From: Octopus sinensis
Taxonomy: Eukaryota
DNA: 64,000 nt
Direction: 5' to 3'
Assembly: GCF_006345805.1 (NCBI RefSeq)
Contig: NW_021832997.1
Coordinates: forward strand, 1-64,000
Shown one piece after another: positions 16,171 through 55,789 of the stretch; position 1 is the first letter of the stretch; every line of letters begins with the position of its first letter. Both the position numbers and the translations under genes were made by a program. Below the pieces are notes generated by a model that worked only from the letters and a program-made list of their open reading frames with translations, ran no database searches and was not told the origin of the DNA.

Positions 16171-16248
16171 TCGTGTTTGGTACACCCTCATGGAACTTTA
16201 CCTTTTAATTATGTTTTTAAGTAGAAGTCTGTCTTGTATTGATGTCAG

Positions 16249-16362: not shown

Positions 16363-16429
16363 GTAAGGCCATTACGTTTTATTGCGCATACATACACACA
16401 TATATATAATAATTATATTAATGAAATTG

Positions 16430-16740
16430 TTGTATACAGTGCTCAGGTGCCCCACAACTTGTCAAAAGTGCGTATAAAGCATCTGCAGTAATGTAGAAAT
16501 GTCTGGGGAGTAAACAGTGTACGAGTCAGATAGATGCTTGCTTGTGTATGGAGGGGAGGAGAAGATCAGGTGTAGTGTTGGCGAATCTCAGGAAATTTTC
16601 AAGGATGCAGTGCTCCAACAACTGATGCCGGCAGTTTGTTCCATGCTTCAGCAACTCTAAGCGTGAAAAAATGTTTCCTAACGTCATGGAAGGAGCTGTG
16701 CTGTTTTATGACTTTGTAAACATGTCCACGGGTGTGGACA
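16430..16740 (-). mobile_element. CR1/L2-type LINE 3' end (mirror copy about 31600-31900, +)
   Basis: RKHFFTLRVAEAWNKLPASVV, the canonical CR1-group C-terminal motif. Confidence 0.8.
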
Positions 16741-16759
16741 TATGTGTGTGTGTCTATAC

Positions 16760-16938
16760 CAGTGCTTTTCAAACTTTTTGCTGGAGCGGAACCCCAAGGA
16801 AACATTCCACTGGCTCGAGGAACCCCTGTGCAATAATTCAATAGTCTTATGCACACATATCTGCACGGGAGACTTAAAAATTACCGCCGATTTTAGCAGT
16901 TTTGTAACTCCCTGCGGAACCTTGGTTGAAAACCACTA
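16760..16938. mobile_element. hAT-type MITE (related copies 25914-26068, 31378-31578, 41415-41562)
   Basis: CAGTG(G/C)TTTTCAA...TTGAAAACCACTG termini; near 8-bp target duplication ATATAGAG/ATATAGGA at the 25.9 kb copy. Confidence 0.75.
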
Positions 16939-17280
16939 GTATATATACATATACACTAATAAGGTTTATTTATATGAATATGTGGAGGTGTATGTATAAA
17001 TAGCTTTAGATATAAATATCTAATTATTCCAGTTTATCATTGGGGTGTTACTTCATTTTCTTCTTAGCAATAATCTCTATTCATTCTAAACACTAATTGA
17101 AGCACCCATAAGGAACCTACACGTGTGTCTGGATATTTATAACTACCTGTACGTGTATATCTTGGTGGATTAAAATTTATCTAAACATTAACACGACATG
17201 TTTGTCCCATAAGAGCCAGAATAACACCCATTGTAACTTTAATAAACTCATGGTTTTTAGGTTAAAATTTTACAACTTAA

Positions 17281-17870
17281 TCTCTCTCTATATATAAAGC
17301 TGAAGTTGTCCGTGTATGGCAGCCTTCAACTAACACTATCTCCTCCGAGACCCTGTGGGGCAAGTTGACCAAAATTGAGAGTATGATAGAAGAAGGCTTG
17401 CTCTTCATTCCGTAGAAGATAAAATTCAAATCAGACCATGTTAACACCAAAAACTATTTACGTCAAAAAGGTGCTTTTTGGCAATCTTTCGTCTCTAGTA
17501 GACCTTTCCGTAAAAAAATTTTTTTATACATATGGGCTTGCGGGAACTTTTGAAGTAATGAGAGCGAAAGAGACTAAGAGAAAGCGATTGTATGAGGAGG
17601 GAAGTTCTTTTGAAGTTACCGTGCATGGCAAGCATTGATGTACATGTGTGTTTGATGGGGTGTGGGAGACAGACAGTATGTTGTGTAAGTGAAGTGCTTC
17701 TGTTAGTGTGTGTGAAGAGACAGAGTAATGTGTGAAAGAAAGAGATAACTGAAATTTTTTACTCGGTGTATGTGTATATGTATCTATCTATGTGTGTATG
17801 TATGTATATTACTTCAAAAGTTTAATTGCTCATGTATATTTGTGTAAGTACTGTATATGAATGTGTATAC
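17281..17870 (+). mobile_element. Helitron-like element, 5' portion (mirror copy about 30250-31062, -)
   Basis: TCTCTCTCTATATATAAAG 5' end; internal CAAGTTGACCAAAATTGAGAG block shared with the other Helitron pieces. Confidence 0.65.
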
Positions 17871-24842: not shown

Positions 24843-25784
24843 TTAGTAAACAAGAGATGTATTTTTAATTTTACCAGGATTTACATCTCTGGTCATCCAA
24901 ATTTGAAATTCATGTTCCTCCTCGACTTTAAAATCCGCAGAAGTGCCTGGCTGCGTTCTTTCTGCATGAGTGTAATGACAACGCGCCTCTTCGTCACCCT
25001 CCTCGCTGTCAACATCCCGACGGTCATGAAACTCCTCCCCGTTGCATTTAGACGTAACCTTTCCTCGGCTGTCATTGATGTCCGCATCTTGGGTGAAGGG
25101 CTTTCGTCTTGTGTCTGTTGCATTAAAACCTGGCACTTGTACGACAGCAGTTGTTGCGTTCCGTCTGTGCAGTAAATTTGTCAGGAACAGTGCTGAATGC
25201 TTGAAAGAATATGGCGAAGGGATCTTTAAACAGTTCTGCTTTTTACCTGAGAATTGCTGCCCCTGTTTTCTTTCATGTTCACTTCTTATCAAATGCGATT
25301 GGTTCATTTTATTTGATACAGTTTCTCTCATTTTTGTTGTAGTTATTGCTGCTGTTGTTCTCGTCGAAGTCAACAAACTTTCGTCAGGTTCCAGAGGGTC
25401 GCGGCTCGGAAGATTTGAATTTGTTAAGACGATCACAAAAGCTTCCATATTATCTTCAGAAAGTTTTACAGCATCCTTCACAAGAGAAAGAATTACGTTT
25501 GGCAATTCTGCCTATTCATCTTCGGGAAATTGTTTCTTACTAAGGAATTTGTCAGCAGAGATTCTTTGGTAGATCTGTTGCTAGGCATAAAGTTTCTGTG
25601 TAGGATCCAAAGCTTGGTGGAGATTAGGGACGGCAATGATTGATGCAGTACCATATAGGGATGGAAAAGCGTTATTGTTGTTAGTGGAATAAGTCCAGCC
25701 GATGCAATTTGAGGAGCTTTTGTCTCTGTCAGCGAACCCGCCAATGTAGTCGATGGTTTTAGGAGATGCAATGGTGTCGCTTGT
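24843..25784 (-). pseudogene. Decayed partial paralog of the terminal exon at 39168-40259
   Basis: Same acceptor (TTAATTACAG|) and homologous peptide, broken by many short deletions; upstream exons absent from this copy. Confidence 0.8.
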
Positions 25785-28125: not shown

Positions 28126-28692
28126 AAATATATAGTGCGTATGTTTTTATTGGCAAAATGACCATTCCGAAATATAGCAATATATACCCTGTGGCACAAG
28201 TTGGCCAAAATTGAGAGTATGGTAGAAGGCTTGCTCTACCTTCCATAGGAGAAAAGATTGATATCGGACCATGTTAACATCAAAAAGGTGCTTTTTTTTT
28301 TTCTATTAAAAATTCCCATTTTTTAACTGCTGTGTCGCCATTTCTCAGTGTATTTCAACCAGAAAACTGTTCACTTAAAGAAATAATAAGCTACATGAGG
28401 CAAAATTTTTAATTTTCAAAAATTCTAAAGGGTAGAAACAAACCCGAGCAATACTACTAGTATATACAGAGAATAGGAACTACATGTGGAAATGTAAGGG
28501 GAAGAAAATGCACAGTAACGATAGATATATACAATTAGATGACGTTCGATTTTTAAAGAAAAAAAACCTGTCTCTAGAAGTGCTGTTCACAAAAAGTACG
28601 TCAGTAATTATCTAGACTTACTATGAAATATCAAAGCTTTCATAGATATTCATTGTTATACAAAGTGTTTCATCCAATGACTTCCGATATCG

Positions 28693-29135
28693 TTATTCTC
28701 CTGTATGATTGGATATGTGTGCAGCCAATTGTGCTTTTTGAGAGAACGATTTACCACAGATGTCACACTGATAGGGCTTCTCTCCTGTATGAATACGTTT
28801 GTGCCTAGATAAGGTACCTCCATCGGAGAAAGATTTTCCACAGGCATCGCAATCATATGGTTTCTCTCCTGTATGAATACGCTTGTGTCGGGTCAAGGTG
28901 CCTCCGTCGGAGAACGATTTGCCGCAGATGTCACAGTGATATTGTTTCTCTCCTGAGTGAGTGTGTTTGACCAAGGAATTGCTCCGAGAGAAGAATTTAG
29001 CACAAATGTTACATCGATACGGCTTTTCACCTGTATGGAGGTGTTTGTGACTGTAAACAGAGAATGATTTACTACAGATCTCACAGTGATACGTGTAGCT
29101 GAATGAATAGAAATAATGTTCAGTGTGTCTCCTAC
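28693..29135 (-). pseudogene. C2H2 zinc-finger gene ZNF-B, five fingers (two damaged by deletions), stop directly after TGE
   Basis: CxxC...HxxxH fingers with TGEKP linkers; fingers 1 and 2 shortened; 5' end abuts a SINE fragment. Confidence 0.85.
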
Positions 29136-29431
29136 TTGATTCAGCCCGTCGTATATACATGTGTGTGTCTTACTATCGCTTGTCAACCGGTGTTGGTGTG
29201 TTTACGTCACTGAGGCTTAGCAGTTCAGCAAAGAGAGCGATAGAATAAATACTAGGCTTTAAAAAAAAGAAGTAAAAGGATCAATTTATTCAACTTAAAA
29301 CTTCACCAAGATGGTGGACCAGCATGACCGCAATCTAATACCCGTAACAAATAAAAGATGGGCGTGACTTCGGTATAGGTACCGGATACATTTCAAGAAA
29401 GTGTTTTTTTTTTTTTTTTAAATACATATTT

Positions 29432-29780: not shown

Positions 29781-32700
29781 ATAAGGGGTTGGGGTGGGAG
29801 AAAAGGGTTTCTGTTATCTTCAGAAATGTAAACAAAGCCACTTTCCGGTACCTATACCGAAGGATCGCCAATAGAGGAATTATTAAATGCGAATTTCATG
29901 CTTTGGAGTGTAGGATCTTTATAAAATGGGGAAAAAGGAAAGAAACCGGGACAGGTTCTTGAATAACAATGCGATGGCCTCACCTAGTAAAAATGCCTCC
30001 TGGCTGTGTCAGGACATCAACAGAGGAGAAGAAGAGAAAGGACAACTTGTTCCTTATTGAAAAAATCAGGTCCCTCGGTGGGTACGGGAGGCTAGGATCG
30101 AACCCCGAAGGAAAGAATGGTTTTTCAGGCGCAGGCTCGGTCGCCTGACGTCACTACCGCTTTTCCATTTCAGCCAATGATATCAAAGTCAGATATCTGT
30201 GTAAACGGTTGCTATGACAATATTGTGTGTGTTGATGTGCATGCATTTCTTGATTTGGCAACGTTTCGTTTGTAGTGGCACACGCTTCCGTAAAATACTT
30301 ATATTTTTTTACATGTGGCTTTGCGGGAATATTTGAAGTAATGAGAGCGAAAGAGACTAAGAGGAAGCGATTTTATGACGAGGGAATTTCTTTTTGAAGT
30401 CCCCGTCTGTGTGTTTGATGGGGTGTGGGAGACAGACAGTATGTTGTGTAAGTGAAGTGCTTCTGTTAGTGTGTGCGAAGAGACAGAGAGAGATAACTGG
30501 AATTTTTTACTCGGTGTATGTGTGTGGCCGATTCATTTTTTACGGAAATCGACGGAGGAATTCTACGGAAACGTGTGCTACTACAAACGAAACATTGCCC
30601 TTGATTTTGTTTTCAGTTTGTATATATATATGCTTGTATGTATAGAAATTGAATTCACCTCAATAGACGTCATTGATTGGTTGAAATTGAAGAAGAAAAA
30701 CCCAACAAATATCTTACAAACTCTAGAATTTTCTCAATAAAGCCAAGAGAAAAAGATGTTTTATTTTGACACATTCTACCACTCTTTAAGTGAACATTTT
30801 TCTGGTTAATGTACACCGAAAAATGACGACACAGCAGGCAAAAAATAGGGATTTTCAAAGGAAAAAAACCCCACCTTTTTGATGTAAATAGTTTTTGGTG
30901 TTAACATGGTCCGATTTGAATTTTTTCTTCTACGGAAGGAAGAGCAAGCCTTCTTCTATCATACTCTCAATTTTGGTCAACTTGCCCCACAGGGTCTCGG
31001 AGGAGATAGTGTTAGTTGAAGGCTGCCATACACAGACAACTTCAGCTTTATATATAGAGAGAGATTAAGTTGTAAAATTTTAACCTAAAAACCATGAGTT
31101 TATTAAAGTTACAATGGGTGTTATTCTGGCTCTTATGGGACAGACATGTCGTGTTGATGTTTAGATAAATTTTAATCCACCAAGATATACACGTACAGGT
31201 AGTTATAAATATCCAGACACACGTGTAGGTTCCTTATGGGTGCTTCAATTAGTATTTAGAATGAATGAATAGAGATTATTGCTATGAAGTAACACCCCAA
31301 TGATAAACTGGTATAATTGGATATTTATACATACACCTCCACATATAAATAAACTTTATTAGTGTATATATATATACCAGTGGTTTTCAACCAGGGTTCC
31401 GCCAGTACAGTCCAGGGGTTCCGCAAGAAGTTACAAAACTGCTAAAATCGACAGTAATTTTTAATTCTCCTGAGCAGATATGTGTGCATAAGACTATTAA
31501 ATTATTGCACAGGGGTTCCTCGAGCCAGTGGAATGTTTCCTTGGGGTTCCGCTCCAGCAAAAAGTTTGAAAAGCACTGGTATAGACACACACGCATATGT
31601 CCACACCCGTGGACATGTTTACAAAGTCAGAAAACAGCACAGCTCCTTCCATGACTTTCGCAAACATTTTTTCACGCTAAGACTTGCTGAAGCATGGAAC
31701 AATCTGCCGGCATCAGTTGTCGGAGCACTGCATCCTTCAAAACTTCCTGAGATTCGCCAACACTACACCTGATTTTCTCCTCCCCTCCATACACAAGCAA
31801 GCATCTATCTGACTCGTACACTGTTTACTTCCCAGACATTTCTACATTACTGCAGATGCTTTATACGAACTTTCGACAAGTTGTGGGGCACCTGAGCACT
31901 GTATACAATAATTTCATTAATATTATATATATGGGTATGTATGCGCAATAAAACGTAATGGCCTTACCTCGTAACTTTCTGTTGGGAGTCCTCGTCAGGT
32001 TGCCCATTGACAACCAAATATACATATATATTTTCCTTTCTTCACTATTTGTTAAACTCTCTGGCTCCGTCTCTGCCACCTGACATCAATACAAGACAGA
32101 CTTCTACTTAAAAACATAATTAAAAGGTAAAGTTCCATGAGGGTGTACCAAACACGAAGTTCTGCGAGCAACAGACTTCCTTCCAATAAATGTTTGTTTC
32201 AGTTTCCGGCACTGTCCCTGACGTCACTTCCTCTTAGTCATTATCGATTTGGGGGTCGATAAGCTGGGTCAGCTAAACTAGGTCAAATGCAAAAGGGGAT
32301 CGAAAAGGCGACGAGCTTGCCAATTAGCGCGCCAAACGAAAATGCTCAGAAGTACTCCGACCGCAAAGACGTCCCGGGGAAGCGAACCTCCGCAGGACGT
32401 CACGGCGGACGAAATACAACTAAGCATTCCGTCCGACGCGCTAAACGACCGGGCCAGCTTGCCGCCACTGAAAAATTGTGTAAAAAATGACATATTTAAG
32501 TTTAAAAAAAAAAGAAGAAAAATTGAAGGCTGTCCGTGGAACTAGACATAAGAAATATTCTACCATTATCGTCACAACATTCTTTAACTTTTTCTCTCAA
32601 AATGGGTTTTTTTTCTTCAACCCAGTTTTGCTTTCGCTTCTATTTAAAGCAAAATGCTTCGGCATCCAGACTCCCCTAAAATCCACACATATATAATATA

Positions 32701-33130
32701 AATGTATACATACCCACGTAAATATGTACATATATGTGTACAAGGCATCAAAAAAACGTTGGACCCAACGAGAAACGAACTTTTGGGGTGGGACAACAAA
32801 AAATACAGATATACATATACGACGGGCTTCTTTGAGTTTCCATCTACCAAATTACATTGTCCCCAGCCCTTTGAATATTTCAAATAATTAAGGCTGCGAG
32901 CTGGCAGAAACGTTAGCATGCCGGGCGAAATGCTTAACAGTATTTCGTCTGGTGCTACGTTCAAATTCCGCCGAGGTCGATTTTGCCTTTCATCGTTTTG
33001 GGGTCGATGTAATCGACTTAATCCGTTTATCTGTCCCCTCTGTGTTTAGCCCCTTGTGGGTAGTAAAGAAATAGGTTTGCAGGAGTGTGAGAGTCAATTG
33101 GCAGATGAGTGAGTGATGAACAGGGCAGAG

Positions 33131-33869
33131 TCACTCAGGTTGAGTATGAGTGAAGTTATGTTTAGTCAAGTGTGCTCTTTGAGAGAACGATTTGCCACAG
33201 GTATGACAAACATAGGGTTTTTCTCCTGTGTGAACACGTTGGTGAGTAGTTAACTGATCGTGGAGAGAGAAAGATGTGTCACAGTGGTATGGCTTCTCAC
33301 CTGTATAAATACGTATGTGAATGGTCAAGCTACCTGTCTGAGTGAAGGACTTGCCACAGATGTCACAACGATATTGTTTCTCTCCAGCATGAATGTGTTT
33401 GTGCTTCGTCAGAGCGCTTCCATTCGAGAATGATTTTGCACAGGTAGGGTTTCTCGTCGCTGTGAATTCGGCTGTGGGTCGTCAGGTTGCCACTCCGCGA
33501 AAAAGATTTTCCACAGATGTCACAGTCGTACGGCCTCTCTCCTGTATGAATGCGCCTGTGAGCCGATAAGTTACCGCTTAGAGTGAACGACTTACCACAG
33601 ATGTCACAGTGATAGGGCTTCTCTCCTGTATGAATACGTTTGTGATTATTTTGAAAGAACGAAGTACCACAAATATCACAGCGATATGGTTTCTCTCCTG
33701 TATGAGTACGTTTGTGAATAGAGAGGCTATCTTTGCGAGAAAATGTCTTTTTGCAAACATCACAAGGATATGCTGTTTTCCTTATATCTTTCGGCATCTC
33801 GTCAACAAAATTAATCATTTTAAGCTCTGATTTACATTTAATATTGTCCTCACACAATTCACTTTCCAT
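33131..33869 (-). pseudogene. C2H2 zinc-finger gene ZNF-A, eight fingers, frameshift near 33443
   Basis: MESELCEDNIKCKSELKMINFVDEMPK then TGEKP-linked fingers; fingers 2 and 7 deleted internally, finger 5 frameshifted, finger 6 His to Tyr; ends HLTKHNFTHTQPE*. Confidence 0.9.
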
Positions 33870-34794
33870 CAGTTTCCGTCTCTCACCGAAATATAAAGAT
33901 GCTTTTCTATTTCTCGGAGTGGTCGGCGTTAGGAAGGTATCCAGCTGTAGAAACTCTGCCAGATCAAGATTGGAACCTGGTGCAGCCATCAGGTTCGCCA
34001 GCCCTCGGTTGAATCGTCCAACCCAAGCTAGCATGGAAAGCGGACATTAAACGATGATGATTCCTAAGTGATTCTGTGTTATTTTCATCAACTGTGATCT
34101 TCGTCAATATCCGAAGATACTGCAAGCTCCATCGTTATCCAAGTTTCATGAGAACGCGATATCATCTTCAGCGCATTCAAGACAGTGAAGTAGAGAAGTT
34201 TTACTACGTAATGCCAGTTAAATGAAATATTCCATTGCAATTTACCAAAGATTAATACAAACAGGGTAAAATTTGTTCTGTGTACAATTTTCCTTTAGAC
34301 TTGGTAAATGGTCGATGGATCCAGAGTAAAAATGTCCTTTAATGCCAAGCCATCTGGAATATTCTGAAATAGCAGAGAAACGGTGTAAACTAGAGAGGAT
34401 ACTTAAAATGTTGTGTGTGTATCTTTTGATTCTGTCATTGAAAAGTGTGCATTTTATGAAGAAAGACAAGAACGGTTACCAAGGAAATTCAAGTTTGCCT
34501 TTCGATTTGGTATTAAGGTTATGTCATACAACCTCGTGTAATCTCCATATTTCCAGACTACACATGTATCTTCCGTTTTGGAATTTGGCTTACAAGATTC
34601 TTTATAATATAAAGTTTATATGAATTCGTGTGTTGAAGCATATTATTGGAAGGAAGAGCAAGCCTTCTTCTATCATACTCTGAATTTTGGTCAACTTGTG
34701 CCGCAGGGTATATATTTCGGAATGGTCATTTTGCCAATAGAAACACACGCACTATATATTTGGTGTTACTTTGCTTCAGTGTTATTTTTTACAT

Positions 34795-38983: not shown

Positions 38984-39167
38984 TATTATTATGAAATGTA
39001 ATACATATACACACAGGTTATCCCTGCAGATGACAGCATGTGGCCAAGCAGTGTTTACTCAACAAGAGATGTATTTTTAATTTTACCAGGATTTATATCT
39101 CTGGTCAACCCATTTTGCATACTTGCTCCAAATTTGAAATTCTTCCCTGCCTTGTTCCTCCTCGACT

Positions 39168-40259
39168 TTAAAATCCGCAGAAGTGCCTGGCTGCGCTCTT
39201 TCTGTATGAGAGTGATGATAACGTTCTCCTTCGGCGCCTCTTCATCACCCTCCTCGCTGTCAACATCCCGACGGTCGTGAAGCTCTTCCCCGTTGCATTT
39301 AGACGTAACCTTTTCTCGGCTGTCATTGATGTCCGTGTCTTGGGTGGACAGCTTCCTTTTGAACGCTTTCGTCCTGTGTTTGTTTGGATTCTTTGTTGCA
39401 TTAAAACCTGGCACTTGTACGACAGCACCTGCAGTTGTTGCGTTCCGTTTGTCAGGAAGAGTGCCGAATGCTTGAAAGAATATGGCGAAGGGATCTTTAA
39501 ACAGTTCTGCTTTTTACCTGAGAATTGCTGCCCCTGTTTTCTTTCATGTTCGCTTCTTATCAAATACGATTGGTTCATTTTATTTGATACAGTTTCTCTC
39601 ATCATTTTTGTTGTAGGTATTGCTGCTGTTGTTGTTCTCGTCGAAGTCAACAAACTTTGGTCGGCTTCCAGAGAGTCGCGGCACTTTACTGGGTGGTATG
39701 GAACTAAAGGCTCGGAAGATTTGAATTTATTAACGAATTGCGAAAAACCCCAGAATGAAAACTGGTCCGGCGCTGTTGAAACGATCACAAAAGCTTCCAT
39801 ATCGTCTTCAGAAAATTTTACAGCGTCTTTCACAAAAGAAAGAATTTTGTTCGCTTTCTCTGAGCGACCTTCGTTTGACAATTCTGTCTGTTCAACTTTT
39901 GAAATAACAGGAAATTGTTTATTGTTAAGGAATTTGTCAGCAGAGAGAAGAGATTCTTTGGTAGATCCGTTGCCAGGCATAAAGTTTCTGTGGTTCTGTG
40001 TAAGGTCCAAAGCTTGGTCCTCGACCTGGTGGAATTGGTTGAGATTAGGGACGGCAATGATTGATGCAGTACCATACAGAGATGGAAAAGCATGATTATT
40101 ATTGTTGTTAGTGGAATAAGTCCAGCCGATGCAATTTGGGGAATTTTTATCATCGTAGCTTTTGTCTCTGTCAGCAAACCCGCCAGTGTGGTCGATGGTT
40201 TTGGAAGATGCAATGGTGTCGCACTGGGATGGCTTGTCATTCTTTCTCGTTGTGCTTGT
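39168..40259 (-). CDS. Terminal coding exon (363 aa plus stop) of an uncharacterised, possibly DNA-binding protein
   Basis: Polypyrimidine-TTAATTACAG| acceptor, phase 0, no stop for 1089 nt (TSTTRKND...EDQALDLT...FVIVSTAPDQFSFWG...); same acceptor in the paralog; phase matches the upstream exon. Confidence 0.7.
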   Translation of the reverse strand, partial: TSTTRKNDKPSQCDTIASSKTIDHTGGFADRDKSYDDKNSPNCIGWTYSTNNNNNHAFPSLYGTASIIAVPNLNQFHQVEDQALDLTQNHRNFMPGNGSTKESLLSADKFLNNKQFPVISKVEQTELSNEGRSEKANKILSFVKDAVKFSEDDMEAFVIVSTAPDQFSFWGFSQFVNKFKSSEPLVPYHPVKCRDSLEADQSLLTSTRTTTAAIPTTKMMRETVSNKMNQSYLIRSEHERKQGQQFSGKKQNCLKIPSPYSFKHSALFLTNGTQQLQVLSYKCQVLMQQRIQTNTGRKRSKGSCPPKTRTSMTAEKRLRLNATGKSFTTVGMLTARRVMKRRRRRTLSSLSYRKSAARHFCGF

Positions 40260-40374
40260 CTGTAATTAAGGAAAAAGGAATAAAACAATTTTACTGATAT
40301 GAAAAAAAATAATGATGATGAAATTGTGTTCAGGTGCGTATAAAACTTATGTAGAGAGACAGATATGTTAGTTA

Positions 40375-40818
40375 GTTAATTTGGCTCAAAAGCAAATAGC
40401 AAGGCCATGTAGGGGGACATGGAGTTAAGTACAGGGTGGTGTTCAGGCCACTTGAGGTCAAAGGAGACTTTGAACAAAGCGGCATCTTCACTATCTCGCC
40501 CGGCAGCTTATTCCACGGATCCGCAACCCGGACGGAGAAAGCCCCTCTCCTTCGATTGAGATGAAATCGTCGCAGATAGAGCTTTTCGGAATGACCCCGC
40601 AGCCGACGCTCTGGAGCAGGAGTGAAGAACAGCTCTTTCGAGAGGTTACACTTTCCGCTTATGATGTTGTGAGCAAGAATGAGATCACCACAGCGTCGTC
40701 GTTTTTCTAGAGAATAAAGGTCGAGCGTCTTCAGCCTTTCTTCATAAGACAAATTCTTGAGACCAAGAACCATGCGGGTAGCCAGCTTCTGGACTCTTTC
40801 GAGATGCTGTATGTCTTT
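40375..40818 (-). mobile_element. CR1-type LINE 3' fragment (intronic)
   Basis: LERVQKLATRMV..LSYEERLKTLDLYSLEKRR.GDLI...RGHSEKL...FSVRVADPWNKLP. Confidence 0.9.
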
Positions 40819-40985
40819 GAGGATATATGTATATAGAGAAGGAAAGGGAGACAAAAAGATATATGTATATAGAAAGAGCAACATAAAATGAAGTGTTTTG
40901 CTCAAGAACACAATGTGTTGCCCAGGAATCGAAACCACGATCATGAGTTCAACACCCTAACCCCGTGCCTCCACTTATATATATA

Positions 40986-41351
40986 CTAGCAGTATCGCCC
41001 GGCGTTGCTCAGGTTTGTAAGGGAAATAACTATAAAGCGTTTTTAGAGAGCTATAGCCAAAAAAATGGAAAAAACTGATGGTAAATTTTTTTGAGAGTAA
41101 AAAAAGGTGGAGTTGCGTCCCCTAGACAGTTTGCGGTTTGTGTTTCTGATTCTCGACCCCATGTCGAATTTATCGATTTTTTTCAGAACTGGGGGAACTT
41201 TTCAAAATTTTCGCTGCGTTAGTTTTGAATTATGACATTGGGCTATGTGTGTGTCAAGTTTCATCAGAATCGGTTGAAAGCCGTGGTCAGGGTGAGAGTA
41301 CAAGCAAACAGACACACAGACAAACTGCCGTTTATATATAGAGAGAAGAGA
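40986..41351 (-). mobile_element. Non-autonomous Helitron, same family as 38640-38983
   Basis: Reverse complement of the 38.6-39.0 kb element with both termini. Confidence 0.85.
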
Positions 41352-44205
41352 TAATAAGGATGAAAAATTTAATGTTAATTTTATTAATATCAATTTAGAA
41401 CCAGTGGTCTAGCACAGTGCTTTTCAAACTTTTTGCTAGAGCGGAGCCCCTGTGCAATAGTCTTATCTGCACAGGAGAATTAAAAATTACTGACGATTTT
41501 AGCAATTTTGTAACTTCTTGTGGAACCCTAACGTTCCGCAGAACCCTGGTTGAAAACCACTGATATAGAGAAAGGAAGAGAAGGTCAATACAGTAAAATT
41601 TATAGCACACAGAGCTGGGGGTCAGTAGTGTAGTGAAAGCATGTGATAAAGATAAGACTACTGAATGATGATGTAACTCGAATGTAGAGCCTAAAAACAG
41701 AAACAATTCCCATTATAGTAAGAACATTAGGTGTGATAACAAAGAACTTCTGACAAATACGTGACAGAAACTAGCACTGCCCACATCCTACGCAAAACAC
41801 TTTCAATACAGTAACCAAAAGAACATCACAGAGCTGCGCTCGGTAGTTAAGTCAAAGCAAGCTATAAAACTATTGAATAATAATAATAGTTTTAAATAAG
41901 GTGGTGAGCTGACAGAGTCGTTACTATGTCAGACAAAATGCTTAGCGTCATTTCTTCCAATTTTACATTCAGAGTTCAAATTCTACCGAGGTCGTCTTTG
42001 CCGTTCATCCTTTTGGAATCGACAAATTAAGGGCCAGTGAAATACTGGGGGGGAGGGGGGTTGTAATCAACTTTGCCCTTCTCCCAGAGTTGCTGGCCTT
42101 GTGCCATAATTTGAAACTGATGATAGTTTCAAAGTTTGAAACAAGGCCAACAAGTTTTAGGGGAGCGTCGGTTATGTTGACCCTAGAACAAGGAAAGGAA
42201 ACTCAAACTTATCCAAAATGTCAACAGTTCTGTCTGTTTGCTGCCTTGATGATGAGAATAATAATTTATTTCTTTATTACCCACAGGGGACATACAAAGA
42301 AATTAAGTTGATTACATCGACTCCAGTCTGTAACTGGTACTTATTTAATTGACCCACGAAGGGATGAAAGGCAAAGTCGACCTCTGCGGGATTTGAAATC
42401 AAATTCAATGGGTGGCATCTGTGCTAGTGGAGCGCTGAGAGCACCATCCGAGCGTGATCGTTGCCAGAGCAACAAACTGGCTTCCGTGCTGGTGGCAAGT
42501 AAAAAGCACCATTCAAGCGTGATCGTTGCCAGTACCACCTGACTGGCCCTCATGCCAGTGGCACGTAAAAGCACCCACTACACTCTCAGAGTGGTTGGCA
42601 TTAGGAAGGGCATCCAGGTGTAGAAAGTCTGCCAGATCAGATTGGAGCCTGGTTCGCCAGACCTCAGTCAAATCTTCCAGCATGGAAAGCGGACGTTGAT
42701 GATAATGATTATAATTTGTTTATTGGCCACGAGGGGTTACATTAAAACAATAATTATAATCTTTTCTACTCTAGGTACAAGGCCTGGATTTTGTGGGGAG
42801 TGAGACAGCCAATCACTTCGACCACAATACTCAACTGGAACTTAATTTATGTAAGGGGCAAAGGTGAACTCAGAACATAAAGGCAGACGAAATACCACCA
42901 AGCATTTCGCCAGGTGTGCTAACGATTCTGCCATAATAGTAATTTCTACTCTAGGTACAAGGCCCTGAAAATTTTTGGGGAAAGGGTATGGTCGAATACA
43001 TTGAGACCAGTGCTTGTTTCGACCCTGAAAGGCAAAGCTGACCTTGGCGGAATTTGAACTCAGAATACTGCTAACCAGTTTACCTGGCATGCTAATGATT
43101 CTGCCAGCTTGCTTGCCTATAATGGTTTCAAATTTTGGCACAAGGGCAGCTATTTTGGGGAAGGGGATAAGTCGATTACTTCAACCCCAGTGTTTCACTG
43201 GTGCTTAATTTATCACCCCCTCGAAAGGATGATAGCCATAAAAAAAAAACATGCCAAAACAACAGCAGAACTTGGGGTAGTTCTCTGGCTTGCCAGCTCT
43301 TGTTAAGTGTATATATAGGAGTGGTAAGTAGCTTGTTTACCAACAACATGGTTCCAGGTTCAGTCCCACTGCGTGGCACCTTGGGCAAGTGTCTTCTACT
43401 ATAGCCTCGGGCCGACCAAAGCCTTGTGAGTGGATTTGGTAGACGGAGACTGAAAGAAGCCCGTCGTATGTGTGTTTATGTCCCCATTACTTAGTGGTTC
43501 GGCAAAAGAGACCGATAGAATAAGTACCAGACTTACAAAGAATAAGTCCTGGGGTCGAGTTGCTCGATTAAAGGCGGTACTCCAGCATGACTGAAACAAG
43601 TAAAAGAGTTTATAGGATTTGGGTAAGTATTTCTTTAAATATAAGAAAGAATTTAGTAAAATAACTTAGTTATCATTAAGCTAGTGTTAGGAACATAAAT
43701 TGTGACTAAGGTTTGGTGGAAGATTTTAATTCAAAACTTATGCAAACAAGACATTTGTAGCCAGATCCGGTTTCAGCCAGGTTGGTATCAAAAAGATGAA
43801 AGGTAACGTGAAACTCTAAGTAACAGTTTTTGTAATGTCTTTGCAGCTTTTTAATAAAATATATCTGTAAAGTGTGTCTTTGTGTTTATACCACTTGACA
43901 ACTGATGTTAGTGTCTTTACATCCCTATAACTTAGTAGTTCGGCAAAAGTGACTGATAGAATAGGCGTTTAAGAAACCATAAGCCCTGGGGTAGATTTTA
44001 TTCAACTAAAAACCATTGAAGGTGGTGCTCCAGCATGGCCACCGACTAATGACTGAAACGAGTAATAGATTACTACACGTGACCCTCCCTTAAGGTAACA
44101 GAGTTCGATTTGAGGGAGACGTGGCTGTGATTTCTAGAGGTCTGAGCGAATTGGACATACTGAAAGTTGGAGTTTTCTTGATTGTGTAATTTAAGTGTGA
44201 CTTAC

Positions 44206-44381
44206 CTTGACCCTGTTGACGAGGTTCTTTTGGGGCGGGACCCAATTGACATTTGGGGGTACGTGCCTTCCCGTCACGTCGACCTCCCAGTTGCCAATGT
44301 TGTGGAGGTACATCCGCATGTTGACACGGAACGAACAACGATGGCCACTTTTCGCTCGTTTCTCATCTTTCTTCAGGCAAT
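44206..44381 (-). CDS. Internal coding exon, 176 nt: (N)CLKKDEKRAKSGHRCSFRVNMRMYLHNIGNWEVDVTGRHVPPNVNWVPPQKNLVNRVK
   Basis: Strong acceptor TTTCTCTTTTCCACAG| and consensus donor AAG|GTAAGT; phase 1 in, phase 0 out; open, complex peptide. Confidence 0.8.
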
Positions 44382-46304
44382 CTGTGGAAAAGAGAAAAAC
44401 AGAAATGAATAGAAATATACAAGAAGGGCAGGTCTGGTTGTATATTTATATACATCCAGATCATAGTGGTGCAGTCTCCTGGCTTACCAGCCCTCGGTTG
44501 AACCGTCCAACCTATGCCAGCATGGAAAGCAAACATTAAACTATGAGGATCGACGAGATGAGATCTTTTGCTCAAGAACATAAGACACTGCCTGGTCCAT
44601 GATTTTGCGATCATGTGGATGTACACATGTTACAAGTATACATGTATGGCCGTTTGCCAGCCCTGTCTGGCACATAATAAGGACTCATGGAGTGGTTGGC
44701 GTTAGGAAGGGCATCCAGCCGTAGAAACATTGCCTGATCAGACTGGGCCTGGTGCAGCCTTCTGGCCTCCCAGACCCCAGTTGAACCGTCCAACCCATGC
44801 CAGCATGGAAAGCGGACATTAAACGACGATGATGATGATGTGTGTGTGTGTATACATATATATGTGGCACGTAAAAAGCACCATCCGAAGCCAGTGCCGC
44901 CTCGACTGGCTTCCATAAAATGCACCAATCCGACTGTGGCCGTTGCCAGCCTCGCCTGGCACCAGTGCAGGTGGCACGTAAAAAGCACCCACTACACTCA
45001 CGGAGTGGTTGGCGTTAGGAAGGGCATCCAGCTGTAGAAACACTGCCAGATCAGACTGGGCCTGGTGCAGCCTTCTGGCCTCCCAGACCCCAGTTGAACC
45101 GTCCAACCCATGCCAGCATGGGAAGCAAACATTACATGATGATCCAGCCAGCAAACGGTAACAGGTATGCTGAGGTAGACCTCACAGGTACTGATACCAT
45201 GCGAAAATCACTCAGATCACTCTGCAAAAAAAGGTTCATCTTAGAAAAGGTGTTCAGCCTTAAAAGCTATGCCAAAGCAGACCTTACCAGTGCTGCTGCC
45301 ACATAAAAAGACCCAGTCGGCGCAGGAGTGGCTGTGTGGTAAGTAGCTTGTTTACCAACCACATGGTTCTGGGCAGGTCTGGTGAGGCGGTTGTATATCT
45401 ATATACATCCAGATCATATTGGCACGTGGTCGAACTGTCCAACCCATGCCAGAATGGAAAGCAAACATTAACCATTTTGTTACCATATTTCTGCTGAGAT
45501 GCTCTGTGTTTCTTTCAATTATAACAAAGAATTTAGTAAAATAACTTAGTTATCATTAAGTTAGTGTTAGGAACATAAATTGTGACTAAGGTTTTAATTC
45601 AAAACTTATGAAAACAAGACATTTGTACTCAGAGGTGGTTTCAGTCGGGTTGGTATCAAAAGGGTTAAACAACGACAATAATGATGATCCAGCCTGCCAA
45701 TGGTAACAGGCAGACCACATGGGTACAGACACCATGCAAAAAGCACCCAGATCGCTCTGCAAAAAAAAGGGTTCATCTTAGAAAAGGTGTTCAGCCTTAA
45801 AAGCTATGCCAAACAGACCTCACCAGTGCTGGTTCCACATAAAAAGCACCCAGTCCTCTCTGTAAAAGTGCCAGCATTAGGAAGGGCATCCAGCTGTAAA
45901 AGCCCTAAAGTAGACCTCTTTGGTGCTGGTACCATGTAAGAAGTAACCAGTCCACTCTGGATGGCATTAGGAAGGGTATCCAGTTATAGAAGCCATGCCA
46001 AAGCAGACCTCTCTGGTGCCATGTAAAAAAGCACCCAGTCCACTTTGTAATGTGGGCACCCAGCCCTAAAAAAAGAGCTGGCAAGAGAACTGCCCCAAAT
46101 TCCCCTGTTGTTTTGGCATGTTTTTTCTTTTTTTATGGCTGGGTGCCCTTCCTGATATTTCTGCTTGAGCACCTCCATGCTGAATCTGTCTGATACGTAA
46201 TGGAAAATAGGCCTCAGTTTCAAAACATTGATGTCAAGGTCTGAAAGGAATTATTATCATTTCTGTTGATTACTCGAAAAAAGCCAATAGGAAATAACAC
46301 TTAC

Positions 46305-46356
46305 TAAACAAAACTTTAAAATTTGTTACAGTGGTAGCGGTGACAGGCGCAAACAT
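46305..46356 (-). CDS. Upstream coding exon part: MFAPVTATTVTNFKVLF (exon probably starts at 46468)
   Basis: Donor TTTA|GTAAGT is phase 1, matching the 44381 acceptor; ATG in AAAACAATG context; acceptor TTTATTTCTGTAG| at 46468. Confidence 0.6.
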
Positions 46357-46789
46357 TGTTTTTGCCTTTGATTTAATCTACAAAACCACTTTCCCCACAT
46401 CCTTGTGTCTGGAATTTCCGTCCAGGAAGAAATATACGAACAGGGAACGACCTGCATAAATTCCCTTACTACAGAAATAAAGTTAATTAAAAGCCTAAAT
46501 ATCTGATGCGTATTATAATTATTATTATTTTTCACTTTAGCACTTTCATCATGAGACCAAATAACATTGGGTTTTCTAAAAATATTTACTGTTATAAACC
46601 CAAACTCGAATATAAAAGTTTAAAAGGTTTTAAGCAACTAAAAATACAGCAAGATACAATACGAACAAAGATTGCTAAATTGTAAGCAAAACCAAACTTC
46701 AACGCAATAACATTTTTATGCAACGAGTTGCTACATTCTAGACTAATTAAAATCAACATGAGGAATATTTAAAGGAGAATTCATCTACG

Positions 46790-47157: not shown

Positions 47158-47910
47158 GTAGTCCTAGGTACACTATGTATGAATAAAAGACGGGATGGTC
47201 ACAACTGGAACATGTTTTAAATCATAGGTCTGCTGGATCAGGACTGACCTGGGGCTAAACAACAAGGGAGGCACATTAGATAATGTAGTCCTAGATACAC
47301 TATGTATGAATAAAAGACAGGATGGTCACAGTTGGAACATCCTTTAAATTATAGCTCTGCTGGATCTAAGCTGACCAGGGGCTAAACAACAATAAGGGAG
47401 AACACGTTAGATAATGTAGTCCTAGATGCACTATGCCTGAATAAAAAACAGGATGGTCACAATTGGAACATCCTTTAAATTATAGCTCTGCTGGATCAGG
47501 ACTGACCTGGGGCTAAACAACAAGGGAGGCACATTAGATAATGTAGTCCTAGGTACACTATGTATGAATAAAAGACAGGATGGTCACAGTTGGAACATCC
47601 TTTAAATTATAGCTCTGCTGGATCTAAGCTGACCAGGGGCTAAACAACAATAAGGGAGAACACGTTAGATAATGTAGTCCTAGATGCACTATGCCTGAAT
47701 AAAAAACAGGATGGTCACAGTTGGAACATCTCTGATCATAGGTCTGTCTGGATCAGGACTGACCTGGGGCTAAACAACAAGGGAGGCACATTAGATAATG
47801 TAGCCCTAGATACACTGTGCCTGAATAAAAGACGGGATGGTCACAACTGGAACATGTTTTAAATCATGGCTCTGCTGGATCTAAGCTGACCAGGGGATAA
47901 ACATCAACAA
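47158..47910 (+). repeat. Six-unit tandem array alternating 127- and 131-bp units (258-bp dimer)
   Basis: Units start GTAG(T/C)CCTAG at 47158, 47285, 47416, 47543, 47674, 47800; A and B endings alternate. Confidence 0.9.
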
Positions 47911-47920
47911 AGGGGGTCGA

Positions 47921-48946
47921 CCTTGAGTGACTTCAACACAACCAAAGCATTCTATAGGGGATTAGTGGAGGGGAGGTACGACGACGATCTCGGGGCAAAC
48001 CTGGGCGTCGACGAGGAATACCTGACCCGCCTGTTTCAAACGACTTTCGGCCCGGGACCTATGGACAACTTCCAGAGATCCCTGGCCTGGCGGTGCTACC
48101 GAGAAGCGCTACCCGTTCGGGATAAGCTCTATAGGCATGGCTCGAGAAACACGGGGCCGACCTGCCCGAGATGCGGGCAGAGCGACGAAACCGCTCTGCA
48201 CGCAATCGTGCAGTGTCCAGCAATTTCCCACCTGTGGGCTTATGTCGAACGACTGCTGTCACGTGTGGGACGTATCGGTTTATCAGCCGAGTCTATCGTT
48301 AATATCGTCACGCCTCCTTCCTTCAAACGGGAAGGAAGAGCTATTTTTATCATACTTGTGGCTATGGCGAAAGAATGTATCTGGTGGACGCGCCTGAAAG
48401 GATTAGAGACAAACACTTTCCTCTCTGGTCAATCTCTCATCAACTTCTTCAAGTATCACTTGAGGAGGAAAGTGAGAGTAGAGAGGCAAGTTTTGTCTAG
48501 CGAATGTTTTAAAAAAAGATGGGTGAATGTAGCAAGGATGGCACGTATGAATGACGAAGCCACCTTGACTATGATTCTATGAACCATAAAATTAATACAG
48601 AGAGTTGCTTATTTGCAAAAAAAAAAAGAAATATAACATGTGACTTCATTGACCGAGGTTACCGTGGTCTTTTCCGTAGGCTTTTCTTTCCACGAGTAAA
48701 CCTCACCTGTCCTCCCCTTTACACTTCATATTGACATTTCTGTGATAACGATCCCTACTGATCAATTTTTTTCCTCTCCCCCTTTTTTTTAACCCACCCC
48801 CTTTTTTTGTCCTCTTTCTCTCCTTTTACGATCCCTTTTGATCGAAACTCCCCCCTCATTTTTTTTTTTCCTTTAACCTTCAAAAGAAAAGCTCTACCTT
48901 GTAATTTGTTCTATCTGTGTGCAGCCCTGTGTGGCTAATAAAGAAA
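47921..48946 (+). mobile_element. 5'-truncated Tx1/L1-clade LINE, ORF2 C-terminus open for 219 aa, 3' UTR and AATAAA
   Basis: Homologous to 12.5-13.4 kb; CPRCGQSDETALHAIVQCP. Confidence 0.9.
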
Positions 48947-54137: not shown

Positions 54138-55343
54138 GGAGGCGCAATGGCCCAGTGGTTAGGGCAGCGGGCTCGCGGTCGGAGGATCGCGGTTTCGATT
54201 CCCAGACCGGGCGTTGTGTGTGTTTATTGAGCGAAAACACCTAAAAGCTCCACGAGGCTCCGGCAGGGGATGGTGGTGATCCCTGCTGTACTCTTTCACC
54301 ACAACTTTCTCTCACTCTTACTTCCTGTTTCTGTTGTACCTGTATTTCAAAGGGCCGGCCTTGTCACTCTCTGTGTCACGCTGAATATCCCCGAGAACTA
54401 CGTTTAGGGTACACGTGTCTGTGGAGTGCTCAGCCACTTACACGTTAATTTCACGAACGGGCTGTTCCGTTGATTCGGATCAACCGGAACCCTCGTCGTC
54501 GTAACCGACGGAGTGCTTCCATTTCAAAGGGCCGGCCTTGTCACTCTGAATATCCCCGAGAACTACGTTAAGGGTACACGTGTCTGTGGAGTGCTCAGCC
54601 ACTTACACGTTAATTTCACGAGCAGGCTGTTCCGTTGATTCGGATCAACGGAACCCTCGTCGTCGAACCGACGGAGTGCTTCCATTTCAAAGGGCCGGCC
54701 TTGTCACTCTGAATATCCCCGAGAACTACGTTAAGGGTACACGTGTCTGCGGAGTGCTCAGCCACTTACACGTTAATTTCACGAGCAGGCTGTTCCGTTG
54801 ATTCGGATCAACCGGAACCCTCGTCGTCGTAACCGACGGAGTGCTTCCATTTCAAAGGGCCGGCCTTGTCACTCTGAATATCCCCGAGAACTACGTTAAG
54901 GGTACACGTGTCTGTGGAGTGCTCAGCCACTTACACGTTAATTTCACGAGCAGGCTGTTCCGTTGATTCGGATCAACCGGAACCCTCGTCGTCGTAACCG
55001 ACGGAGTGCTTCCATTTCAAAGGGCCGGCCTTGTCACTCTGAATATCCCCGAGAACTACGTTAAGGGTACACGTGTCTGCGGAGTGCTCAGCCACTTACA
55101 CGTTAATTTCACGAGCAGGCTGTTCCGTTGATACGGATCAACCGGAACCCTCGTCGTCGTAACCGACGGAGTGCTTCCATTTCAAAGGGCCGGCCTTGTC
55201 ACTCTGAATATCCCCGAGAACTACGTTAAGGGTACACGTGTCTGCGGAGTGCTCAGCCACTTACACGTTAATTTCACGAGCAGGCTGTTCCGTTGATTCG
55301 GATCAACCGGAACCCTCGTCGTCGTAACCGACGGAGTGCTTCC
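54138..55343 (+). mobile_element. SINE family A with five extra tandem copies of its 165-bp 3' half
   Basis: Units start ATTTCAAAGGGCC at 54521, 54684, 54849, 55014, 55179; whole structure flanked by ATATATTTAC (54127-54136, 55345-55354). Confidence 0.92.
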
Positions 55344-55789
55344 CATATATTTACGAAAGGGAGACAAACCCAGCAGCCAGGTCTGCATCTAGAGACACGC
55401 ATGTTTCAGGGTCTTCTCTATATTTCTAAACACTATTTAAATCTATTTATCTTACCACTCTCACCATTTGACAAGTATTTACTATATTTTCTCTCTACTC
55501 AATATCAAACCTGGGTCCCAAACCGTTAATTCGTTAACCATTGGTTAAACGTAGTTAATATTTTCGTGAAGGGTTTAATTTTCAAGTTAACTTTGGAAAT
55601 CATTATCGGACTAATTAACTTCCGTTAACTCAAGTCAACTTGAGTTAACTTCCGTTAACTGAAGAACGGTGACGTGAAACTCTTGAGTTCGAGTTTGTAT
55701 AGATTCTTTCGGTTTCAATAAAGAGTATTTTACTCTATCTTCGGTATTCGAGCACTAATTTTACCAACTTGTTTTGCATTTGTGTGCTT

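What the first reader, a model, noticed from the sequence alone, without database searches (positions are those of the whole stretch)
39168..46356. Unannotated three-exon gene with a Cys/His module and a MADS-like segment
Consensus splice sites with matching phases (1, then 0) join 52+176+1092 nt into an intact 439-aa ORF that the ORF track misses. The N-terminus KVLFNC-x13-CSFRV...WEVDVTGRH resembles WRKY/GCM1/FLYWCH-type zinc-binding DNA-binding folds. EDQALDLT recalls the PxDLS CtBP-binding motif. KILSFVKDAVKFSEDDMEAFVIVSTAPDQFSFWGFSQFVNKF follows the helix-strand-strand pattern of type-I MADS/NRF1 domains. A candidate novel transcription regulator beside a ZNF cluster; the domain calls are by-eye inference.
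Basis: partly seen in the sequence, partly recalled or inferred. Interest (0 to 1): 0.72.

Follow-up and report, generated by a model that had tools for sequence, protein, structure and literature searches.

The report
Truncated octopus copy of transposon-derived gene
The proposed gene is real in part, but it is a young duplicate that has lost its first exon and suffered a frameshift, copied from an uncharacterised octopus gene whose zinc-binding DNA-binding module probably came from a Mutator-like transposon.

Summary
The three segments join mechanically into a 439-aa ORF. Only exons 2 and 3 are supported by homology.

The window is colinear at about 96% identity with the Octopus vulgaris locus of CAI9744330.1 (paralog B). 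Paralog B is a young segmental duplicate of a full-length gene (paralog A: O. vulgaris CAI9744276, O. sinensis LOC115226066, O. bimaculoides LOC106884181).

- **Lost exon.** The duplication began inside intron 1, so B lacks the 132-aa first exon.
It has no homolog support and is no better than chance: 5 of 12 upstream GTAAGT donors give ATG-open phase-1 exons.
- **Constraint.** The B lineage evolves under relaxed constraint.

Exon 2 encodes only the C-terminal half of a conserved Cys/His domain. That domain has no Pfam model. It occurs in many invertebrate proteins and at the N-terminus of MULE/SWIM-like transposase relatives. A confident AlphaFold model of a homolog resembles only WRKY domains (TM 0.5-0.6, E-values not significant).

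So the WRKY/GCM1-type guess is plausible for the family, but the module is incomplete here. The MADS/NRF1 and CtBP-motif ideas remain unproven. The most likely reading is a decaying or truncated paralog.

The parts
44206..44381 (-). Exon 2, real and phase 1 at its 5' end. It encodes DCLKKDEKRAKSGHRCSFRVNMRMYLHNIGNWEVDVTGRHVPPNVNWVPP..., which is the C-terminal part of the Cys/His domain: the fifth Cys, the H-x-C, the last two beta strands and the final His.
   Evidence: 100% identical to O. vulgaris paralog B and 98.9-99.4% to paralog A. tblastn to P0001, P0003 and P0091. Strands predicted at pLDDT above 90.
39055..40259 (-). Exon 3 in its conserved extent, ending at TAA 39057-39055. It carries the cephalopod-specific tail with invariant islands: ALDLTQN; KDAVK.S.D.M..FVIVS....FS.WG...F..KF.SS.PL; LKIPS.YS; and, after the frameshift, ERSQALLRIL.SR.
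   Evidence: tblastn in two frames, 91-96% identity to P0001 and P0091. Invariant columns.
39447..39453 (-). Site of a 13-bp deletion between ACAAA direct repeats. It shifts the frame.
   Evidence: DNA alignments with L001, L002, L003, L004 and window copy 2.
39168..39446 (-).
   Evidence: The same shifted frame is open for 93 codons in intact copies.
46305..46356 (-). It is not supported and lies inside a conserved intronic block.
46156..46590 (-). Single-copy block of the ancestral intron 1, conserved with O. bimaculoides at 80-86%, similar to the coding exons (86-90%). Possibly a regulatory element or a non-coding exon.
55511..55541 (-). Alternative first coding exon used by the O. vulgaris model CAI9744330.1 (MVNELTVWDP plus G, donor CAG|GTTTGA, phase 1). 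It is identical in the window, and its use is unverified.
47158..47918 (.). A 127/258-bp tandem array. Homology between paralog A (intron 1) and the window ends at 47918, which is the 5' edge of the duplicated segment.
40372..40944 (-). ORF inside intron 2 that reads like the C-terminal end of a LINE ORF2. This is by-eye inference; there is no Pfam hit.
24849..25778 (-). Second, degraded copy of exon 3, with stop codons and deletions. It retains the 13 bases that the main copy has lost.
33143..34034 (-). C2H2 zinc-finger exon 5 kb downstream. In O. vulgaris paralog A, one annotated isoform (P0002) splices the gene's last exon onto the corresponding ZNF exon.

Best explanation
The locus is paralog B of an octopus-lineage gene.

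**The full-length gene (paralog A).** It has three coding exons. Exon 1 plus exon 2 encode a domain of about 180 aa. The domain has a small helix/three-strand unit, then a strand ending in Cys, then a Cys-rich knuckle (C-x5-C-x3-C-x5-C-x3-C), then H-x-C, two strands and a final His. I infer that it binds two zinc ions and that it binds DNA. Its origin is most likely the N-terminal DNA-binding module of Mutator-like (MULE) transposases, that is, a WRKY-GCM1-type fold carrying a zinc-binding insert. Exon 3 encodes a mostly disordered, cephalopod-specific tail with short conserved motifs and a C-terminal helix. These are plausibly partner-binding sites.

**How paralog B arose.** A segmental duplication of more than 25 kb copied the gene from the middle of intron 1 onward, together with the neighbouring C2H2 zinc-finger exons. 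It happened after the split from O. bimaculoides and before the O. vulgaris/window-species split. Paralog B therefore never had exon 1.

**What the window adds.** In the window's lineage a 13-bp slippage deletion frameshifts exon 3 and removes the conserved C-terminal helix.

**What is shown and what is inferred.** Shown: the homology, the duplication boundary, the deletion, the relaxed constraint and the domain distribution. Inferred: zinc and DNA binding, transposon origin, and loss of function. If the locus is transcribed, it can only make a protein with half a zinc module. It is most likely a decaying pseudogene.
For: **Orthology and paralogy.**
- The window is colinear with L003 (the O. 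vulgaris locus of P0091) over the whole 64 kb at about 96%.
- It is colinear with paralog A locus L001 only from window 47918 downward.
- Exon 1 of A has no match in the window.
- dS between A and B is 0.06-0.09, against 0.33 to O. bimaculoides.

**Frameshift.** The 13-bp deletion is absent from every other copy examined.

**Constraint.**
- Substitutions on B lineages are 18 non-synonymous to 9 synonymous, against 5 to 13 on A lineages (Fisher p = 0.016).
- The window lineage shows 8 to 3, plus two in-frame deletions. This is indistinguishable from neutral evolution.

**Domain family.**
- phmmer found 58 hits centred on residues 99-190 of P0001.
- The Cys, Gly and His columns are conserved.
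- No Pfam model matches in any of 50 members.
- P0048 and P0051 carry the domain N-terminally, followed by weak MULE and ZSWIM RNaseH-like hits and visible SWIM motifs. Close relatives occur in Gigaspora.

**Structure.**
- The AlphaFold model of the Pomacea homolog has domain pLDDT of about 74-96.
- Its only Foldseek hits with TM above 0.3 (target-normalised 0.49-0.61; every other listed hit 0.26 or lower) are WRKY domains 7z0r, 9m0k and 7p8k, with probability 0.21-0.63.
- The architecture fits the WRKY-GCM1/MULE framework of Babu et al. 2006 (PMC1702500).

**Expression of a full-length relative.** A complete 616-aa relative is encoded on an intron-less RNA-seq contig.
Against: - The ORF of paralog B is intact in O. 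vulgaris (P0091), and dN/dS between A and B is 0.23-0.36. B may therefore have been, or may still be, functional there.
- The counts for neutrality on the window lineage are small (11 substitutions).
- The 13-bp deletion could be an assembly error. No reads were available.
- Exon 1 could lie more than 16 kb upstream, beyond the window.
- Foldseek E-values to WRKY domains are 0.7-2.4, which is not significant. The canonical C-terminal HxH or HxC ligand pair is absent.
- No sequence-profile link to WRKY, FAR1, FLYWCH or GCM was found.
- No expression data for this locus could be examined.
Confidence: 0.68

Rival explanations
1. The locus is an intact functional gene like O. vulgaris CAI9744330.1 (477 aa), with its first exon at 55541-55511. 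On this view the 13-bp deletion is an assembly artefact or a polymorphism.
For: The substitute first exon and its donor are identical in the window. The conserved frame downstream of the deletion is still open and 93% identical to the orthologs. The ORF of B is intact in O. vulgaris.
Against: A 13-bp loss between direct repeats is a typical real slippage event, not a homopolymer error. B lineages show relaxed constraint. Even if the frame were intact, the protein would lack the first two-thirds of the zinc domain (about residues 10-132 of roughly 10-170). The 10-aa first exon has no homolog support.
Confidence: 0.15
2. A new first exon (46356-46305) arose in paralog B, and the 439-aa protein, including its new basic tail, is a neofunctionalised regulator.
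For: The ATG-to-donor ORF exists only in B copies. It was created by loss of a 28-nt segment and is kept in both the window and O. vulgaris B. It has a perfect GTAAGT donor and lies in a block conserved across octopus species.
Against: Five comparable ATG-open phase-1 exons occur by chance upstream. No protein in 5.8 billion carries this N-terminus. The open shifted frame pre-exists in copies that do not use it. The window-lineage dN/dS is about neutral.
Confidence: 0.07
3. The exons serve as the 5' module of a chimeric C2H2 zinc-finger transcript. Exon 3 would use its internal donor at 39089/39088 (CCTG|GTAAAA) to join the ZNF exon downstream, as in O. vulgaris isoform P0002.
For: P0002 joins ...DVNPG to a C2H2 array. 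The donor is conserved in the window. A ZNF exon lies 5 kb downstream on the same strand.
Against: P0002 is a single predicted model without visible evidence. In the window the frameshift places this donor out of frame. The O. vulgaris B locus annotates the ZNF as a separate gene.
Confidence: 0.1

Closest known systems
O. vulgaris CAI9744330.1 (ortholog, paralog B), and paralog A proteins CAI9744276.1, O. sinensis LOC115226066 and O. bimaculoides LOC106884181
   Same: Exons 2 and 3, the splice junction, the motifs and the genomic neighbourhood. Protein identity is 93-96% to B, 91-95% to A and 80-92% to O. bimaculoides.
   Different: The window copy carries a 13-bp frameshift. B copies lack the 132-aa first exon. 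All of these proteins are uncharacterised predictions.
WRKY-GCM1 superfamily DNA-binding domains of MULE transposases and their domesticated derivatives (FAR1/FHY3, FLYWCH, GCM1, classical WRKY; Babu et al. 2006)
   Same: A beta-sheet zinc module with a Cys after one strand and a Cys before the next. The insert between them chelates metal, as in GCM1. The final His follows the last strand. Distant members carry the domain N-terminally in MULE/SWIM-like proteins. WRKY domains are the best structural neighbours.
   Different: No sequence-profile match to any of these families. Only one C-terminal His is present instead of HxH or HxC. There is an extra N-terminal helix/three-strand unit. Fold similarity is below significance. 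The window encodes only the last two strands.
NRF1/EWG and MADS (SRF-type) DNA-binding domains
   Same: A predicted helix followed by two strands around KILSFVKDAVK...FVIVS...FSFWG. NRF1 (8k4l) and SRF (1k6o) appear among the weak Foldseek hits.
   Different: E-values are 5.7-8.6, probability is below 0.1 and rmsd is 7-8 A, on a model with pLDDT of about 50. There is no Pfam SRF-TF or Nrf1_DNA-bind hit. The helix region is acidic or neutral, not basic. The region is found only in cephalopods.
PxDLS CtBP-binding motif
   Same: An invariant A-L-D-L-T-Q-N island in a disordered region, with a D-L core.
   Different: Ala replaces the defining Pro, and Thr replaces Ser. Binding has not been tested.

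Membership tests
WRKY-GCM1 superfamily | Four-stranded antiparallel beta-sheet core | tested here: inconclusive
   AlphaFold models show strands at the expected places, with pLDDT above 90 for the last two. In Foldseek only WRKY domains reach target-normalised TM of 0.49-0.61 and probability up to 0.63, but E is 0.7-2.4.
WRKY-GCM1 superfamily | Two Cys bracketing the strand 2-3 loop, plus an HxH or HxC pair after strand 4 | tested here: not met
   A Cys after the L.C strand, an H-x-C before the next strand and a G-x-H after the last strand are conserved. No second C-terminal ligand (HxH or HxC) is present. The ligand set is non-canonical.
WRKY-GCM1 superfamily | An insert between the two core Cys, zinc-binding in GCM1 and basic in the FAR1/MULE type | tested here: met
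   An insert of about 30 residues with four nearly invariant Cys (C-x5-C-x3-C-x5-C-x3-C).
WRKY-GCM1 superfamily | Association with a MULE transposase core and a SWIM finger in some members | tested here: inconclusive
   P0048 and P0051 carry the domain N-terminally, then show sub-threshold MULE hits (E 1e-3 to 3.5e-3) and ZSWIM1-3 RNaseH-like hits (3e-4 to 1e-2), plus visible CxC...CxH motifs. Gigaspora relatives exist.
WRKY-GCM1 superfamily | Sequence-profile match to WRKY, FAR1, FLYWCH or GCM models | tested here: not met
   No such Pfam hit at E up to 10 in the model, the orthologs or 50 family members.
WRKY-GCM1 superfamily (the window's gene itself) | A complete domain encoded at the locus | tested here: not met
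   Exon 2 supplies only the fifth Cys, the H-x-C, two strands and the last His. The exon that encodes the remainder has no match in the window.
MADS (SRF-TF) / NRF1 DNA-binding domain | Match to Pfam SRF-TF or Nrf1_DNA-bind, or to solved MADS or NRF1 chains | tested here: not met
   No hit at E up to 10 in Pfam or in PDB profile searches.
MADS (SRF-TF) / NRF1 DNA-binding domain | A basic helix followed by a two-stranded sheet | tested here: inconclusive
   H321-337, E343-347, E354-358 and H360-365 are predicted at pLDDT of about 50. NRF1 8k4l scores E 5.7 and SRF 1k6o scores E 8.6. The helix region is not basic, as the sequence shows directly.
CtBP-binding PxDLS motif | A P-x-D-L-S core in a disordered region, conserved in orthologs | tested here: not met
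   The sequence is A-L-D-L-T. It is invariant in 11 cephalopod sequences and lies in a low-pLDDT region. The defining Pro is absent, and binding cannot be tested with these tools.
Octopus LOC115226066/LOC106884181 gene family | Three coding exons with shared junctions and a full-length ORF | tested here: not met
   Exons 2 and 3 and their junction are present. Exon 1 is absent and the ORF is frameshifted. The locus is a truncated member.

The most novel reading that the evidence does not exclude
The Cys/His module defines an undescribed branch of WRKY-GCM1-like, MULE-derived DNA-binding domains that animals have recruited repeatedly. In many invertebrate phyla it is joined to the gephyrin G domain. 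In octopuses, duplicates embedded in the C2H2 zinc-finger cluster would act as truncated regulators, or as 5' modules spliced onto ZNF arrays. That would make them an octopus counterpart of the KRAB/SCAN-type accessory exons. On this reading the window's copy is a young, still transcribed variant, not a dead gene.
Probability: 0.1. Interest if true: 0.6.

Novelty: new variant of a known kind. Interest (0 to 1): 0.33.

Why it matters
The locus by itself is a minor annotation point: a truncated, probably decaying duplicate. It is useful mainly as a dated example of segmental duplication and gene decay inside the octopus zinc-finger cluster.

The more useful by-product is the domain. It is conserved, probably binds zinc, has no Pfam model and links three kinds of protein:
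- MULE-like transposase relatives, including fungal ones;
- stand-alone invertebrate proteins;
- a recurrent fusion with the gephyrin G domain in molluscs, brachiopods, echinoderms and hemichordates.

If it is confirmed as a WRKY-GCM1-type DNA binder, it would add a new transposon-derived transcription-factor family in animals. It would also raise the question of what a DNA-binding module does on a molybdenum-cofactor and synaptic scaffold gene.

Tried and rejected
- **PDB sequence and profile searches.** Alignments A2 and A4 gave no hit at E up to 10.
- **Foldseek on the full-length P0001 model.** Nothing scored below E 0.7, because the model is mostly low-confidence.
- **hhalign against a classical WRKY sequence.** No similarity.
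- **Search for the ancestral first exon.** tblastn with word size 2 and E up to 50 found nothing in the window.
I first thought it overlapped a repeat. This was rejected, because the block is single-copy.
- **Selection on the shifted tail.** The long open shifted frame is not evidence for selection, because it is open in intact copies too.
- **Literature.** Searches for the LOC identifiers, for gephyrin plus MULE and for gephyrin plus WRKY-GCM1 found nothing relevant. Transposon-derived TF surveys list Pfam-recognisable families only.
Full report
**1. Observation**

On the minus strand the three segments (46356-46305, 44381-44206, 40259-39168) have the stated lengths of 52, 176 and 1092 nt. 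They have consensus GT/AG boundaries and compatible phases, and they translate into a 439-aa ORF. The description is therefore mechanically correct.

**2. Homologs**

A word-indexed search with the model found three octopus proteins:
- P0001, O. vulgaris hypothetical protein, 591 aa;
- P0002, an O. vulgaris isoform fused to a C2H2 array;
- P0003, O. bimaculoides LOC106884181, 621 aa.

The 90%-identity cluster of P0001 also holds O. sinensis LOC115226066 (P0089, P0090) and a second O. vulgaris protein, P0091 (CAI9744330.1, 477 aa).

A 616-aa relative with about 43% identity is encoded on an intron-less RNA-seq contig. At least one full-length family member is therefore transcribed.

**3. Which copy is in the window**

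The genomic locus of P0091 (L003) is colinear with the entire window at about 96% identity. That is the same level as O. sinensis against O. vulgaris at the other locus. The window is therefore the ortholog of this second copy ("paralog B") in O. sinensis or an equally close species.

The full-length gene ("paralog A": L001 in O. vulgaris, L004 in O. sinensis) lies about 1.6 Mb away on the same O. vulgaris chromosome. It aligns with the window only from window 47918 downward:
- The alignment runs from a 127/258-bp tandem array inside A's intron 1, through exon 2, intron 2 and exon 3.
- It continues through the downstream C2H2 exons and a degraded extra copy of exon 3.

A's 132-aa first exon has no match anywhere in the window, even at E 50. 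dS between A and B is 0.06-0.09, against 0.33 to O. bimaculoides. The duplication is therefore younger than that split. B was 5'-truncated from birth.

**4.

- In O. vulgaris paralog A the ATG is destroyed.
- In O. sinensis paralog A an extra 28 nt makes the ORF end at TAA before the donor.
- In O. bimaculoides a 1.3-kb insertion splits the segment.
- The ORF through the donor exists only in B copies.
- The O. vulgaris annotation of B instead uses a 31-nt exon (MVNELTVWDP plus G). This exon is identical in the window at 55541-55511.
- Upstream of exon 2, five of the twelve GTAAGT donors can be read as ATG-open phase-1 first exons. The match is therefore no better than chance.

One point remains unexplained. 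The block 46156-46590 around this exon is single-copy and is conserved with O. bimaculoides at 80-86%, close to the 86-90% of the coding exons. It may be a regulatory element or a non-coding exon.

**5. The 3' end**

Compared with O. vulgaris A and B, O. sinensis A, O. bimaculoides and the window's own degraded copy, the window lacks 13 bases between two ACAAA repeats.
- Downstream the conserved frame is a different one. It stays open, is 93% identical to orthologs and ends at TAA 39057-39055.
- The same shifted frame is open for 93 codons in intact copies, so its length says nothing about function.

**6. Constraint**

Parsimony counts on exon 3 were as follows.

| Lineage | Non-synonymous | Synonymous |
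|---|---|---|
| B stem | 5 | 2 |
| O. vulgaris B | 5 | 4 |
| Window lineage | 8 | 3 |
| A stem | 3 | 8 |
| A tips (pairwise Ovul_A vs Osin_A) | 2 | 5 |

- The window lineage also carries 6-nt and 3-nt in-frame deletions and the frameshift.
- B against A gives Fisher p = 0.016.
- A departs strongly from neutrality (p = 8e-6). B does not (p = 0.12), and neither does the window lineage alone (p = 0.45).
- The counts are small, but all point to relaxed constraint on B.

**7. What the protein family is**

An exhaustive phmmer search with P0001 gave 58 hits, nearly all to residues 99-190, and some also to residues 12-60.

The consensus reads: VK.EEL..FL......F....i.RKGR..v.....V..G.nGfLsD ... v..E.L.C.G.gNC.R.CGG.G.C...C....r...GH.C.F.V.l.m....G.W.V...G.H.pP...W.PP.

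The domain occurs in:
- other cephalopod genes;
- Pomacea, Argonauta and Branchiostoma;
- proteins with an upstream gephyrin G domain, in molluscs, Lingula, echinoderms and hemichordates; in Diadema it lies between the G and E domains;
- a fusion to PUS3 in Biomphalaria;
- the N-terminus of 700-1050-aa proteins that show sub-threshold MULE and ZSWIM RNaseH-like hits and SWIM-like motifs, with close relatives in the fungus Gigaspora.

No Pfam model covers the domain in any of 50 members.

**8. Fold**

- AlphaFold on P0001 was confident only for residues 10-60, 106-114 and 151-169.
- On the Pomacea homolog with 50 aligned sequences the domain reached pLDDT of about 74-96.
- Foldseek of the Pomacea model against the PDB gave no significant E-value.
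- The only hits with target-normalised TM of 0.49-0.61 were WRKY DNA-binding domains (7z0r, 9m0k, 7p8k; probability 0.21-0.63). Every other listed hit had TM of 0.26 or lower.

Several features fit the WRKY-GCM1/MULE framework of Babu et al. 2006:
- a Cys-rich insert between two core Cys, as in GCM1;
- a terminal His;
- the N-terminal position in transposase-like proteins.

Against this, the canonical HxH or HxC pair is missing and no sequence-profile link exists. I rate "works like a WRKY-GCM1-type zinc DNA-binding module" as likely, at about 0.6. Formal membership remains unproven.

**9. What the window encodes of the domain**

The exon 1/exon 2 boundary falls inside the Cys knuckle, at residue 132/133 of P0001. 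Exon 2 supplies only the fifth Cys, the H-x-C, the last two strands and the final His. Without exon 1, the helix/three-strand unit, the strand ending in the first Cys and three knuckle Cys are missing. A stable zinc module is therefore not expected. This last step is inference.

**10. The tail**

Eleven cephalopod sequences share invariant islands: ALDLTQN; K.AVK.S.D.M..FVIVS....FS.WG...F..KF.SS.PL; LKIPS.YS; and ERSQALLRIL.SR.
- The second island is predicted as helix-strand-strand-helix, but only at pLDDT of about 50.
- NRF1 and SRF appear only among noise-level Foldseek hits.
- Neither Pfam nor PDB profile searches link the region to MADS or NRF1.
- The helix region is acidic or neutral, unlike a MADS helix, which is basic.
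- ALDLT lacks the Pro of PxDLS.
- The frameshift removes the ERSQALLRIL helix, which is predicted at pLDDT of about 75.

**11. Verdict**

The finding is a partly correct gene model of a 5'-truncated, frameshifted, young paralog of an annotated but uncharacterised octopus gene. The Cys/His guess points to a real domain family that appears to be undescribed in Pfam and is probably transposon-derived. That family is the more interesting result. The locus itself is most likely decaying.

Noticed in passing
window 46156-46590 (minus strand): This single-copy intronic block is conserved with O. bimaculoides at 80-86%, close to the 86-90% of the coding exons. The rest of the intron aligns only through repeats. 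It could be an enhancer, an alternative promoter or a non-coding exon.
   Followed up: partly
proteins P0012-P0016, P0019, P0020, P0025, P0026, P0030, P0031, P0033, P0037 and P0040 (not in the window): The same Cys/His domain is joined to the gephyrin G domain (PF00994) in molluscs, a brachiopod, echinoderms and a hemichordate. In Diadema it sits between the G and E domains. This is a recurrent architecture with no literature that I could find.
   Followed up: partly
window 24849-25778 (minus strand): A degraded second copy of exon 3, with stop codons and several deletions. It is part of the same duplicated block, since paralog A locus L001 also has a remnant at 31992-32185.
   Followed up: partly
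window 28645-29160 and 33143-34034 (minus strand): C2H2 zinc-finger exons (zf-H2C2_2 E of about 1e-33). O. vulgaris isoform P0002 splices the paralog-A gene onto the corresponding array.
   Followed up: partly
window 47923-48579 (+) and 12203-13036 (+): ORFs with a zf-RVT domain, which are LINE reverse-transcriptase fragments. The first lies immediately beyond the edge of A/B homology at 47918.
   Followed up: no
window 54374-55343: A tandem array of 165 bp with 5.9 copies at 98% identity, just downstream (in gene orientation) of the 31-nt first exon used by the O. vulgaris model.
   Followed up: no
window 15453-17479 (+) and 30724-32852 (-): Both stretches match the same part of paralog-A locus L001 (25954-28177) at 88-92%. 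The window therefore holds an inverted duplicate of about 2 kb.
   Followed up: no
L004 13974-14149 and 15145-15320: In the O. sinensis paralog-A locus, exon 2 occurs twice, and both copies are 99.4% identical to the window's exon 2. This is either a tandem duplication or an assembly artefact.
   Followed up: no
window 40372-40944 (minus strand, intron 2): A 190-aa ORF that reads like the C-terminal end of a LINE ORF2 (...LYSLEKRRRCGDLI...RGHSEKL...WNKLP...). It has no Pfam hit.
   Followed up: no
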